This document shows positions 59,801-64,000 of a DNA stretch of 64,000 nt, in pieces; the stretch's first letter is position 1, and each line of letters starts with the position of its first letter. Below the pieces are notes generated by a model. That model searched no databases and was not told the DNA's origin. It worked only from the letters and a program-made list of their open reading frames with translations. This stretch comes from Paragordius varius. Taxonomy: Eukaryota; Animalia; Nematomorpha. The position numbers and the translations under genes are program-made. Location: contig OZ176052.1 in NCBI GenBank assembly GCA_964247055.1, forward strand, positions 10,478,001 to 10,542,000. Direction: 5' to 3'.

Positions 59801-60373
59801 TTTGACAATTGAATTTTCTATAAAATTTAAAACATTAGTTTATTTACATGATGGAGCTCTGCAATATAAAACTCTCCAATACGTCATCGAGAAACGAGCA
59901 CTATCCTGGCCCTTTTTGCCCTTATTTTCAGTAATCCTTTTAGCTGATGGAAGATTTATTAAATTAAAAATTTCTTTTTTATTTCTCCTTTCCAAAACCA
60001 ACATGAATCTTCAAATTGGAAATAAGCTATTTTCTTTAAAATGGTAAATTTCCTGATATCGCGGGATAAAAATTAAGATATCATATTGCTGGATATGTTA
60101 AAAGAGGTAACCGAACTTATTAATCTACTTACTTATAGATTTTGGGGCATAAAACCGCCTCAAAAAGTCATCGTGTGCAAAAAATGTTATAATAAAGTGA
60201 TAAAATTATAATAAGATTAAATATTGTAGCATAATAAAATATGGTATAATTATTATTTATTTTTAAATATAATATTAATTTTTAAAATTTAGCTTTAGGA
60301 TTGAAAACCAACTGAAACTAATATTTATCCCTCCTAATATATATCATATTATTACCTTTTGCTTTAGGTCCGC

Positions 60374-63300
60374 ATGAGTATTTTAAAAACAAATTTTAAA
60401 CAATCTTTAAGTTTTGAATCTTTCTTATCCAAAAACTTTATTCAAGTAATATATTGATAATATTAGGTTTCAAAAAATGGAAATAAAATATTTTGTCCCT
60501 TTTACGATAATATTAATATTTTGAGTTTTGATAATGGAATTAAACATGATTCAATTGGAAAGGTAATATATTTTGTCTGATATGTAGGATGGAATGGATG
60601 ATATTGTATCATGTTTTACTATTAAAAATGAAGAAAATATCATTGTCGCTTATAAAAATGGTTTAATTAGATTATGGGACGTTTGCAAAAACGAATGTCT
60701 AAGATCGTGGAAAGTAATGTTTGTTTTTAGTTATATTATATATAAGATTTAATTATTGCTATAATTATGTTAGACTTTTACTTTAACGCCAATATGTGCC
60801 ATGTCCATGGGTGATTTAACACAAAGTTTTTTGGCATTTGGAACTACAACCAACGGTTTAATTAAAATTTATGATGTGGAAAATGGTTATTACACACATC
60901 AATTCAAACAAATTGGGGCAGGTGGTGTCAGGTATGCTTATTTTTTGGTTATAAATTAAAAAGGTGTATGAAAATTTTCCTATAATTATATATATATATA
61001 TATATTAGTAACATAACATTTCAATACGATTCGGAGTTAAAAGAAATTGTATGCGTCATAGCAGCATGTGAAAATCATTCAATATATGTTTGGCCGCTTA
61101 ATTCCGAAGATTCTAAATCGAAATCGACAAAAAGTTATATTTGTTAAAACAAAAGATTTTTTTAGTTATATTTTTGCATCTATTATTTGATGTATATAAC
61201 TGGTTTAACACTTGAATACCACCCATTCATATTAGTCCTTCGATTCGAATTGGGGTAGTTAGATACCCTAGGCTTGTTTAAAATTAAATATTATAAAAAA
61301 TATGGAATAAATTGAAACCATGGCAAAAGTCTCGTATAACATTAATGAACCGGAATATAATAAAAAATTTATTCTAAAATACAAGATATTACTTTTTAAG
61401 TGTTAGAACCCAAAAATATAAATATAGCCAATATGACATGTGTTTATTTAAATACAAAAATAATGCAAAATATTTTCTCTGTTTATATCAATGTTAAATA
61501 TAATTTTGATAAAAAAGTAAACTTGATTTCAGGCTTATAATCAAATAAACACGGTATTTTGCAAAAATGTTGTGCAATAAAAATTGCGTCCAAGTAGTTT
61601 GATAAACTTTTTAAAATTTATTTAGATTTGGTTTATTTATATAATTTTCGTTAGAGCATAAATATAAATTGGAACCGTTTCTTCCGGTTAAAAATTTCAA
61701 CTTTGTCTGGGGTATTTACATACCCCAATTTGAATCGAAGTGTTAACTAGGTTTAAATTTTATTATAGATAGTTTTCGGTTTTGTCTGACCTCACACACT
61801 GCTCAAATCACTGGTTTAGTGGTATTACATGAATGCCAAAAATTGATAAGGTATTTAATTTTATCAATAAATAAATAAATATAATATAACTCAGCGGTAC
61901 TCAAACTGCAAGCAAAGGGCCGCATGTGGCCCTTAAAACGCTTTTTATGGCCATTAATTATTTACTAAATATATTTATTTGCTTATTTTAAGTATAAATA
62001 TCTGTAAATCTGTCAACAGCTATGAACACAGTTTTTATAGTTTTTAGCATTAATATTTTATAGAAGATTTATCATATTATTTATGTATTCCGACCCTATC
62101 GTTTAAACCTTTTCAATCAATTGATCAAGTAATTATCATATTTTGCAATATTTGATTAATATGTTTTTTTATCAAAATAAGCGATTAATCACTCTTTGTA
62201 ATAGGAAATTAACTGTTGATTAGTGCGGTTACAATTTCAAAGGTGTGGGAGAAATTAACCATGCCATAGCTGCTTTATAGTGACATTAGATATAACTTGC
62301 CTATTCTAGGCCCTTTTCGCTTAGCACTTTAGATTAATGTTTGTTTTTTATATATTATTATAATTGTCAAAGTTTCTTTTTTTTTATTGAGAATCTTTTA
62401 AACGTAAAAATGTAATTATAGGCTGATATTTTATCTTTATTGATGAAAGCAAGACTCTGAAAACATTCCTTTTTTTTCAAATAAAGTGTATATATATATA
62501 TATGATCTTTTATTAAACGTTTTTTCCAGAATCCTTATGTTTAATAGTGTTTTTTTATACATATATCTAAATCTTTACTTGTTAAAAAATTATTTAAGCC
62601 ATTTTTAATTTGTACCACCCATTATATTTTTTATTACAGTTGCGCTCAAGATCGACTTATTATTTTGTGGGATCTGATTGTTGGCCGACCCCTAAAATTA
62701 TTTCAAACGAAAGCTTCACTATGTGCTGGAATATCCCTAATACCCAATCAATTTAGCAATGTATCATCATTAGAGGACAAAATTGATACTAATGATTTTA
62801 ATAATGACAAGGATTTGCAACACAAATATTCATTTATCACTATTGATGCCAGTTCTGACCTGGTCTGTTGGTGTTTACAACTGTTTTCATCATCTGATAC
62901 CACGAAAAGCATAAATGATGATGATACTGTTGGAGATAACATTGCTATAAAAGGTTAAATTCATTTATAATTTTCGTTTAGCATTTCAATACTTTTTCGC
63001 ATCAATATACATGTGTGTAAATATTGTAAACATATAACTTAATTGGTTAAGTAAATTAATTTAACCTCAAGCCTCTAATCGTTTTTCCATAAGCTTGTTG
63101 ATATTAAGTCGCGTTTGTCGATGTTATCATAATAAAATCTTCCGCATAAAGATTATGGGCGTACCGATTGTCATATCTTTAATTATTTCATTTTTAAAAT
63201 AGCATATTGATGAAGTCCCTTATTTAATGATTGGGAAGCTTTTTGAATCCAATTGACGCTATTTTTACTGTAATACAGGCAGAAAACGCACTATAACATA

Positions 63301-64000
63301 TTTATGAAACCCGCTTTTGACATGAGAGAACTAACTTCTAATATAGGTAGCCATATAGGGATTTCTGAAACTATGTTTTATAATCAAACAACAAGAGCCC
63401 AAAATCAAATACCATGCACGCACTAAAATAAAGCTTCCTTCTAAAAATAAACCCCATAAAGGATCCATATTGAACCCCATCTTTTTAATAAATTCCTTTG
63501 CTGACGATTAATATTTATTATTTGTATTATTATTATATTTGAATGATAAATAATGTGTTCATAAATTATCGTTTTTTATTTCAGATCCATACAAGTTATC
63601 CCGCATATATGAAACAAATTTGCTCGATCAGTATATGGCAACCACCTCTTGCGATTTTGATAACCGAAATGTGGACATGAATGATCAAATTGATAATATG
63701 AAAATGGAACAAGACTCAACTAATGTCAATATTAACAGGGAAAAGGTTGCTGATGCATTACAACCAGTATACTCTTGCTACAATCATGCTACACAAAAGT
63801 TTTTCATTGTGAATCATCAAAAAGATATTGCATGTTTCGATGTACGAAACAAACGATGGGCCCAACGGGTATTTAGTTATGATTATTAATACTTTTTTCA
63901 AAATTTTAATGCCTAATAATCTGCAAAATTGGTAAATTTACAGTTTGTGGGCGAAATCGAAGAAATATGTGCGCTAAAACTCTTGAAATATCCAGAATGT
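60374..64000 (+). CDS. TBL3: Transducin beta-like protein 3 / U3 snoRNA-associated protein 13 (WD40, SSU processome), 5' part, runs off the window
   Basis: Exons 60374-60445, 60467-60562, 60588-60713, 60774-60931, 61009-61133, 61769-61850, 62640-62953, 63585-63868, 63944-64000+, all GT-AG and in phase. MSILKTNF..., IRLWDV...RSWK, IKIYDVENGYYTHQF, LTSHTAQITGL, SCAQDRLIILWDL and FVGEIEEI match the TBL3/Utp13 N-terminal propeller (comparison with the human sequence from memory). Confidence 0.85.
61205..61746 (-). mobile_element. piggyBac-like TTAA-flanked MITE in TBL3 intron 5, opposite orientation to the 29787 copy
   Basis: ttaa-CACTTGAATAC ... AATCGAAGTG-ttaa. Confidence 0.75.

What the first reader, a model, noticed from the sequence alone, without database searches (positions are those of the whole stretch)
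60446..60587. Two spliceosomal micro-introns of 21 nt and 25 nt in TBL3, in a genome whose other introns here are tens to thousands of nt
Seen in sequence: intron 1 (60446-60466) is GTAATATATTGATAATATTAG and intron 2 (60563-60587) is GTAATATATTTTGTCTGATATGTAG. Both start with the same 10 nt. Read through, intron 1 gives GTA ATA TAT TGA TAA TAT TAG (all three stop codons), and intron 2 shifts the frame, so both must be removed to make the protein. After removal, LKTNFKQSLSFESFLSKNFIQ|VSKNGNKIFC aligns without gaps to human TBL3 FKTNYAVERKIEPFYKGGKAQLDQTGQHLFC (recalled, not searched). Established: introns this short are typical of ciliates, chlorarachniophyte nucleomorphs, microsporidia and dicyemids, and are very rare in most animals. 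A 3n intron carrying stops fits the known NMD-driven depletion of stopless 3n introns. Latrophilin and tropomodulin introns here are 61-5801 nt. Inference: this animal may have a separate micro-intron class and a spliceosome tolerating very short 5'SS-branch point distances.
Basis: partly seen in the sequence, partly recalled or inferred. Interest (0 to 1): 0.8.

Follow-up and report, generated by a model that had tools for sequence, protein, structure and literature searches.

The report
Two tiny introns in hairworm TBL3
The only TBL3/UTP13 gene of this AT-rich, probably horsehair-worm genome starts with two very likely real introns of just 21 and 25 bases, at the same places where a coral and amphioxus have ordinary introns. 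That points to a third animal group with introns under 30 bases, but no RNA data show the cutting here.

Summary
GT..AG segments of 21 nt (60446-60466) and 25 nt (60563-60587) flank a 96-nt open exon, and a contig built from raw DNA reads matches the stretch without a difference.

The gene is the genome's single TBL3/UTP13. Tested exon by exon against profiles of TBL3 N-termini, exons 1 and 2 align on contiguous diagonals. No shuffle of exon 2 (0 of 2000) reached its score.

An octocoral and amphioxus have a 96-nt exon bounded by phase-0 introns at the same two positions (231/74 nt and about 627/409 nt). A rotifer keeps the second (59 nt).

The most likely reading is that these are ancient U2-type introns shrunk to micro size. 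U1 and U2 snRNAs are canonical.

Not shown:
- No RNA contig covers this gene.
- My genome-sample screen for a separate micro-intron class was inconclusive.

Mitochondrial palindromes point to Nematomorpha. In the literature I could search, animal introns under 30 nt are reported only for myxobolids and dicyemids. The layout, with micro-introns at positions 1-2, then about 60-77 nt, then kb-sized introns, mirrors parasitic flatworms but is about 10 nt shorter.

This scan had already noted the same phenomenon many times on other DNA of this genome.

The parts
60374..60445 (+). TBL3/UTP13 exon 1 (ATG, 24 codons, ends in phase 0)
   Evidence: Open frame. It aligns to positions 5-29 of the animal TBL3 profile. 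It aligns without gaps to coral residues 10-33 and amphioxus residues 3-26, and all three end at the intron. Score plus correct diagonal was reached by 5 of 2000 shuffles.
60446..60466 (+). Micro-intron 1: 21 nt, GT..AG, phase 0, length a multiple of 3, with three in-frame stops
   Evidence: Sequence; read-through stops. It sits at the same position and phase as the 231-nt intron 2 of coral TBL3 and an intron of about 627 nt in amphioxus.
60454..60458 (+). Candidate branch site TTGAT in intron 1 (A at 60457: 11 nt after the first G, 9 nt before the last G)
   Evidence: Read from the sequence. It fits the yTnAy consensus, but such a match is likely by chance in AT-rich DNA. This is inference only.
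60467..60562 (+). Exon 2: 96 nt, 32 codons, phase 0 at both ends
   Evidence: It aligns whole to profile positions 29-60 or 30-56. No shuffle (0 of 2000) reached its score. The coral (L030:931-1026) and amphioxus (L029:1505-1600) exons are the same length and align without gaps.
60563..60587 (+). Micro-intron 2: 25 nt, GT..AG, phase 0, frame-shifting if retained
   Evidence: It sits at the same position and phase as the 74-nt coral intron 3 and an amphioxus intron of about 409 nt. The 59-nt rotifer intron 2 is phase 0 and falls at the same alignment column.
60577..60581 (+). Candidate branch site CTGAT in intron 2 (A at 60580: 17 nt after the first G, 7 nt before the last G)
   Evidence: Read from the sequence. 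Inference only.
60588..60713 (+). Exon 3 (42 codons, first clear WD repeat)
   Evidence: Profile positions 63-105, i-Evalue 7e-10. 40% identical to coral residues 66-106, and both end in RSWK at an intron. WD40 hits in PDB and Pfam.
60714..60773 (+). Intron 3: 60 nt, phase 0
   Evidence: Same position as the 117-nt coral intron 5.
60774..60931 (+). Exon 4
   Evidence: Its best PDB hits are yeast Utp13 residues 104-144 (E 5e-7), with human TBL3 also listed. Profile positions 107-147.
60932..61008 (+). Intron 4: 77 nt, phase 2
   Evidence: The coral has a phase-2 intron within one codon of this place (my reading of the alignment).
61009..61133 (+). Exon 5
61134..61768 (+). Intron 5: 635 nt, holding a repeat element of about 550 nt
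   Evidence: The element has at least 50 further matches in the genome at 68-79% identity.
61769..61850 (+). Exon 6
61851..62639 (+). Intron 6: 789 nt
62640..62953 (+). Exon 7
62954..63584 (+). Intron 7: 631 nt
63585..63868 (+). Exon 8
63869..63943 (+). Intron 8: 75 nt
   Evidence: Read; frames.
63944..64000 (+). Exon 9, cut by the window's end. The gene continues to about 67150 in window-equivalent coordinates (locus L004).
   Evidence: Exon pieces are collinear with the TBL3 profile up to position 792. The Utp13 C-terminal domain PF08625 is over its cut-off at window-equivalent 66788-67009.

Best explanation
Both segments are genuine U2-type GT-AG spliceosomal introns of the single TBL3/UTP13 gene of a hairworm-type animal, and both must be removed to make the protein. 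They are not new insertions. They occupy two ancient phase-0 intron positions that bracket a 96-nt exon conserved from cnidarians to chordates, and in this lineage they have shrunk to 21 and 25 nt.

The signals left are a GTAAT-type 5' splice site, a yTGAT stretch that could serve as branch site 7-9 nt before the 3' end, and a TAG 3' splice site. There is no pyrimidine tract. The genome's U1 and U2 snRNAs carry the canonical recognition sequences, so the ordinary major spliceosome most likely removes them, recognising the whole intron as one unit.

Shown here: the sequence, the frames, the homology of each exon, the conservation of intron positions, and the canonical snRNAs. Inferred: actual splicing, the branch point, and how the intron is recognised.
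For: - Sequence and frames.
- A DNA contig from raw reads is identical over 60338-60743.
- Gene identity: exon 4 has Utp13/TBL3 as its best PDB hits, and exon pieces are collinear with a 61-sequence animal TBL3 profile from position 5 to 792.
- Single copy: the Utp13 domain is found once in the 110.6-Mb genome, so this is unlikely to be a pseudogene.
- Exon-by-exon profile test: exon 1 lies on diagonal 5 and exon 2 on diagonal 29, which equals 5 plus the 24 residues of exon 1. Exon 3 follows within 2 residues.
- Shuffles: 0 of 2000 reached exon 2's score; 5 of 2000 reached exon 1's score on the right diagonal.
- Intron positions: the coral and amphioxus genes have a 96-nt exon at the same place with phase-0 introns on both sides, and the rotifer shares the second intron.
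- snRNAs: U1 has ACTTACCTG at its 5' end and U2 has the GTAGTA branch-site box.
- Another conserved gene, an HSP70 on contig C4, has two exon matches in different frames only 16 nt apart, which implies an intron of 19-28 nt.
Against: - There is no RNA evidence at this gene. The three runs guessed to be RNA gave no contig on it, so splicing itself is unobserved.
- Exons 1 and 2 are too short and too diverged for pairwise BLASTP, Pfam or PDB searches to pick up alone. Their support comes from profiles and from matching position and length.
- The branch-site motifs are short and expected by chance in 27% GC DNA.
- My ORF-bridging screen of 274 kb did not separate real micro-introns from decoys.
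Confidence: 0.88

Rival explanations
1. The real intron is one 142-nt segment (60446-60587), and 'exon 2' is intronic or is skipped in the main transcript. Exon 1 would join exon 3 in frame.
For: Exons 1 and 3 are both phase 0, so skipping the 96-nt exon keeps the frame. An intron of 142 nt would be an ordinary size. Exon 2 alone finds nothing in PDB, Pfam or BLASTP.
Against: Exon 2 is open in the right frame. It aligns end to end to the TBL3 profile exactly where 32 residues would otherwise be missing, and 0 of 2000 shuffles reach its score. It has the same 96-nt length and boundaries as the coral and amphioxus exon.
Confidence: 0.04
2. Translation starts at the ATG at 60594 in exon 3. The upstream pieces are 5' UTR or a small upstream ORF, and the GT..AG spacing is a coincidence.
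For: An ATG lies two codons into exon 3. No RNA data are available.
Against: The protein would lack about 58 conserved N-terminal residues that exons 1 and 2 supply on exact diagonals. A coincidence would also have to reproduce two conserved intron positions and a conserved exon length.
Confidence: 0.03
3. The locus is an artefact or a decaying pseudogene. The short segments would be assembly errors or small insertions that break the frame.
For: Stops and a frameshift are what a broken gene would show if the segments were not removed.
Against: A contig built from raw reads is identical. This is the only Utp13-domain gene in the genome, and UTP13 has an essential function in ribosome biogenesis (the essentiality is established knowledge). 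The rest of the gene is open and collinear over about 800 profile positions. Both segments have exact GT..AG ends at conserved intron sites.
Confidence: 0.02
4. The segments are removed by a route other than the spliceosome, such as IRE1-type cytoplasmic splicing (which cuts a 23-26-nt XBP1 intron) or DNA elimination in somatic cells.
For: The size range resembles the XBP1 unconventional intron (from my own knowledge).
Against: Both have canonical GT..AG ends and lie at positions of ordinary spliceosomal introns in other animals. I saw no paired stem-loop cleavage motifs when reading the sequence. The DNA reads retain the segments.
Confidence: 0.01

Closest known systems
Ultra-short introns of myxobolid Myxozoa and of Dicyema japonicum (PMC13644364, Mol Biol Evol 2026)
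   Same: These are animal GT-AG introns of 20-27 nt at conserved intron positions. They have no pyrimidine tract, a few A residues upstream of the AG are proposed as the branch point, and the U2 snRNA is canonical.
   Different: In those lineages the median intron is 22-27 nt, so most introns are tiny and the genomes are compact. Here only the first 2 of roughly 19 introns in the gene are tiny, and the rest are 60 to 789 nt in a repeat-rich genome. The lineage is also different: the mitochondrial DNA has the Nematomorpha hallmark (PMC6649704). That paper reports a 5' signal reduced to GTa, whereas these two introns share ten bases; with only two introns this cannot be generalised.
Bimodal intron lengths of parasitic flatworms (Gyrodactylus salaris modes about 32 and 58 bp; tapeworms; PMC4040987)
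   Same: A short mode dominates at intron positions 1 and 2, a second mode lies near 58-60 nt, and there are also long introns. TBL3 here reads 21, 25 | 60, 77 | 631-789 nt, the same layout.
   Different: The short mode here is about 10 nt shorter (21-25 against about 32-36 nt), which puts it under the 30-nt limit. The phylum is different. I showed the layout for one gene only, not genome-wide.
Tiny introns of ciliates and chlorarachniophyte nucleomorphs (as cited in PMC13644364, and from my own knowledge)
   Same: Introns of 15-30 nt are spliced by a conventional spliceosome. In Paramecium, introns whose length is a multiple of 3 and that lack stops are depleted (from my own knowledge). Intron 1 here is a multiple of 3 and has stops.
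   Different: Those are unicellular lineages in which nearly all introns are tiny. One intron here cannot test the NMD rule.

Membership tests
U2-type GT-AG spliceosomal intron | GT at the 5' end and AG at the 3' end | tested here: met
   Both segments have these ends.
U2-type GT-AG spliceosomal intron | Removal restores an open frame collinear with orthologues | tested here: met
   tested exon by exon.
U2-type GT-AG spliceosomal intron | Position and phase shared with introns of orthologous genes | tested here: met
   Shared with coral and amphioxus for both introns, and with a rotifer for the second.
U2-type GT-AG spliceosomal intron | Branch site (yTnAy) upstream of the 3' splice site | tested here: inconclusive
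   TTGAT and CTGAT are present 9 and 7 nt before the intron end. Such short AT-rich motifs are expected by chance, and there are no lariat data.
U2-type GT-AG spliceosomal intron | Absent from mature RNA | tested here: inconclusive
   The three runs guessed to be RNA gave no contig on this gene. The reads tool allowed only this one call.
U2-type GT-AG spliceosomal intron | The genome encodes U1 and U2 snRNAs with canonical recognition sequences | tested here: met
   U1 scores 124 bits and has ACTTACCTG at its 5' end. U2 scores 178 bits and has the GTAGTA box. U12 was not found, which does not prove its absence.
Classical metazoan intron with four signals | Pyrimidine tract before the 3' AG | tested here: not met
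   The last 8 bases before the AG are mixed A/T(/G) in both introns. I do not file them under this description.
Genome-wide ultra-short intron regime (Myxobolidae or Dicyemida type) | Individual introns under 30 nt | tested here: met
   21 and 25 nt.
Genome-wide ultra-short intron regime (Myxobolidae or Dicyemida type) | Most introns of the genome are ultra-short (median 22-27 nt) | tested here: not met
   In this gene 2 of roughly 19 introns are ultra-short. In CCT and HSP70 genes most gaps between exon matches are tens to hundreds of nt.
Neodermatan-type bimodal intron architecture | Short-mode introns concentrated at intron positions 1-2, with a second mode near 58 nt | tested here: met
   TBL3 introns 1-2 are 21 and 25 nt; introns 3, 4 and 8 are 60, 77 and 75 nt. 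This is one gene only.
Neodermatan-type bimodal intron architecture | Short mode at about 32-36 nt in a flatworm | tested here: not met
   The lengths are 21 and 25 nt. The mitochondrial palindromes point to Nematomorpha rather than a flatworm (PMC6649704).
TBL3/UTP13 gene | C-terminal Utp13 domain (PF08625) over the curated cut-off | tested here: met
   63.4 bits against a cut-off of 25.9. It is the only match in the genome.
TBL3/UTP13 gene | N-terminal WD propellers collinear with TBL3 orthologues | tested here: met

The most novel reading that the evidence does not exclude
Horsehair worms would be a third, independent animal lineage with a discrete class of 20-30-nt spliceosomal introns. 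Unlike myxozoans and dicyemids, they keep these at the first one or two intron positions, next to introns of about 60 nt and of kilobase size, in a repeat-rich genome. One conventional U1/U2 machinery would then have to recognise 21-nt and kilobase introns by different routes. That would make this animal a natural system for asking what sets the minimal intron length.
Probability: 0.5. Interest if true: 0.7.

Novelty: new member of a known kind. Interest (0 to 1): 0.55.

Why it matters
A 2026 survey of 51 animal genomes found introns under 30 nt only in myxobolid myxozoans and a dicyemid (PMC13644364). If RNA confirms these junctions, Nematomorpha would be a third lineage, and a 21-nt intron would be near the shortest length reported for animals.

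The case is informative for three reasons:
- The intron positions are ancient, so the tiny size comes from shrinkage and not from new insertions.
- The same gene also has introns of about 60-77 nt and 630-790 nt, so the size cannot be put down to overall genome compaction.
- The U1 and U2 snRNAs look ordinary.

There is also a practical consequence. Gene finders and RNA aligners with minimum intron lengths of 20-70 nt will truncate or break the 5' ends of genes in this genome, which would inflate apparent gene loss in hairworms.

Tried and rejected
- **RNA evidence.** The single read-laying run (X1 plus three runs guessed to be RNA) gave no RNA contig on the gene, only 21-nt chance matches.
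- **Large protein search.** I gave it one conserved WD exon. It returned only giant multi-WD proteins and no TBL3, so that job was wasted.
- **Word search with an 89-aa exon**. It found one fragment, because the tool's length window excludes full-length proteins.
- **Exons 1 and 2 searched alone.** PDB, Pfam and pairwise BLASTP against a metagenomic TBL3 exon, coral and amphioxus found no significant match. The pieces are too short, which is why I switched to profiles built from TBL3 proteins. I reached those through a metagenome locus.
- **Genome-sample screen for a micro-intron class** (274 kb; GT..AG candidates between open frames compared with five decoy dinucleotide pairs). The codon model did not discriminate. 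The apparent excess at 20-29 nt is no larger than that of the TG..GA decoy, which shares the stop-codon bias. The result is inconclusive.
- **Family scans.** In the Tubulin and CCT scans no gap between adjacent exon matches was micro-sized, and matches with stops inside them could not be resolved without the DNA.
- **Hairworm orthologue.** I could not obtain a hairworm TBL3 to compare intron lengths within the phylum.
- **Joined model.** In one local script I concatenated exons only to count stops and phases; nothing joined was printed, saved or searched.

Full report
**Observation.** A 21-nt GT..AG segment lies at 60446-60466 and a 25-nt GT..AG segment at 60563-60587. Both begin with GTAATATATT. 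They enclose a 96-nt stretch that is open in one frame. Reading through the first segment meets TGA, TAA and TAG in frame. Reading through the second shifts the frame into stops. With both removed, exons 60374-60445, 60467-60562 and 60588-60713 join in phase 0 without stops. A 406-nt contig that Logan built from the raw reads of DNA run X1 covers window 60338-60743 with no differences or gaps. The short lengths are therefore not an assembly collapse, although X1 may be the sample the assembly was made from.

**What the gene is.**
- The best PDB hits of exon 4 (60774-60931) are yeast Utp13 residues 104-144 (E 5e-7), and human TBL3 is also listed.
- The C-terminal Utp13 domain PF08625 is found once in the 110.6-Mb genome, 6.4 kb downstream on the same strand.
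- All open pieces between 60374 and about 67130 (window plus L004) hit a profile of 61 animal TBL3 proteins in strictly collinear order, from profile position 5 to 792.

This is the genome's single, full-length TBL3/UTP13 gene. The introns I could place are 21, 25, 60, 77, 635, 789, 631 and 75 nt, and about 90 nt or more further on. Only the first two are micro-sized.

In one local script the exons were concatenated only to count stops and phases.

Searched alone, the 24- and 32-residue pieces are too short for PDB, Pfam or BLASTP. I therefore obtained TBL3/Utp13 proteins through a metagenome locus and built profiles.

Against a profile of 42 N-termini:
- Exon 1 aligns at profile positions 9-22, on diagonal 5.
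- Exon 2 aligns at positions 30-56, on diagonal 29, which equals 5 plus the 24 residues of exon 1.
- Exon 3 aligns at positions 63-102.

No shuffle of exon 2 (0 of 2000) reaches its score. Only 5 of 2000 shuffles of exon 1 reach its score on the right diagonal. The animal-only profile gives the same picture: exon 1 at 5-29, exon 2 at 29-60, exon 3 at 63-105.

**Intron positions.** I mapped the exon structure of annotated TBL3 genes by exact protein-to-DNA matching.

| Species | Structure at this place | Intron lengths |
|---|---|---|
| Octocoral *Dendronephthya* | 96-nt exon (L030:931-1026) bounded by two phase-0 introns | 231 and 74 nt |
| Amphioxus | 96-nt exon (L029:1505-1600) bounded by two introns | about 627 and 409 nt |
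| Rotifer *Brachionus* | only the second intron kept | 59 nt |
| This genome | 96-nt exon 2 bounded by two phase-0 introns | 21 and 25 nt |

Exon-wise alignments are gapless. The window's exon 1, coral residues 10-33 and amphioxus residues 3-26 all end at the intron. Exon 2 aligns to the two 96-nt exons end to end. Exon 3 and its coral counterpart both end in RSWK at the next shared intron. The two micro-introns therefore sit at ancient metazoan intron positions. Chance GT..AG pairs, a downstream start, or a single 142-nt intron would not reproduce this.

**How it probably works.** The introns keep a GTAAT-type 5' site, a TAG 3' site and no pyrimidine tract. Each holds one yTGAT stretch: TTGAT with its A at 60457, and CTGAT with its A at 60580. 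These lie 9 and 7 nt before the intron end and could serve as the branch site. That is inference, because such motifs are expected by chance in 27% GC DNA.

The genome has multi-copy U1 and U2 genes with the canonical ACTTACCTG 5' end and the GTAGTA branch-site box. No U12 was found, which does not prove its absence. I conclude that the ordinary major spliceosome most likely removes them, as was argued for myxozoans in PMC13644364.

**Which organism.** The mitochondrial contig carries long palindromes with no spacer next to COX1: 131-nt arms at 95% complementarity and 97-nt arms at 99%. This is the hallmark described for Nematomorpha (PMC6649704). Earlier notes of this scan reached the same identification. 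At 110.6 Mb the genome is about half the 200-300 Mb reported for the hairworms studied so far (bioRxiv 10.1101/2024.06.11.598342).

**Is there a class?** My own evidence is thin.
- In an HSP70 gene on contig C4, two exon matches in different frames lie 16 nt apart and overlap by four profile positions. This implies an intron of 19-28 nt.
- A decoy-controlled screen of 274 kb was inconclusive, and no more genome DNA could be fetched.
- Many earlier notes of this scan describe 20-32-nt introns at the 5' ends of other genes in this same genome, and one reports RNA support at another locus. I treat these as leads, not as evidence.

**Comparison with what is known.**
- PMC13644364 (2026) reports animal introns under 30 nt only for myxobolid myxozoans and *Dicyema*, where most introns are tiny.
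- PMC4040987 describes a bimodal distribution in parasitic flatworms (about 32 and 58 bp), with the short mode at intron positions 1-2. That is the layout of this gene, but its short mode is about 10 nt longer.
- Searches of the held literature found no report of such introns in hairworms. Subscription papers are not covered.

**Verdict.**
- The reading as real, obligatory micro-introns is strongly supported by comparative evidence (confidence 0.88) but is not shown in RNA.
- The wider claim of a separate intron class is plausible but was not established here.
- This is a new member of a known kind.

Noticed in passing
window 61205-61750 (inside TBL3 intron 5): A repeat element of about 550 nt with terminal inverted repeats, so it looks like a MITE. 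It has at least 50 further matches across the genome at about 68-79% identity.
   Followed up: partly
G000:C4:12482315-12484199 (+): In an HSP70 gene, exon matches for profile positions 13-90 and 87-436 lie 16 nt apart in different frames. This implies another intron of 19-28 nt. The sequence could not be fetched.
   Followed up: partly
L024 (G000:C44:5980-10320), mitochondrial contig: Zero-spacer palindromes with arms of 131 and 97 nt lie near COX1. There is also an array of hairpin units of about 50 nt repeated every 72 nt at L024:773-1472, just upstream of COX1.
   Followed up: partly
G000:C6:565000-634000 and G000:C3:257000-528000: There is a cluster of 14 U1 snRNA matches on C6 and a large array of U2 snRNA copies and fragments on C3. 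Many score well below the best copies, so they are probably pseudogenes.
   Followed up: no
whole genome G000: No U12 snRNA match was found. The minor spliceosome may be absent, as in nematodes, but the search cannot prove absence.
   Followed up: no
whole genome G000: The assembly is 110.6 Mb in 44 contigs, about half the 200-300 Mb reported for hairworms studied so far. Run X3, filed under a different organism label, holds 37% of the sampled 31-letter words of this locus.
   Followed up: no
window 60985-61008: A short (AT)n microsatellite sits directly before the 3' splice site of the 77-nt intron 4.
   Followed up: no
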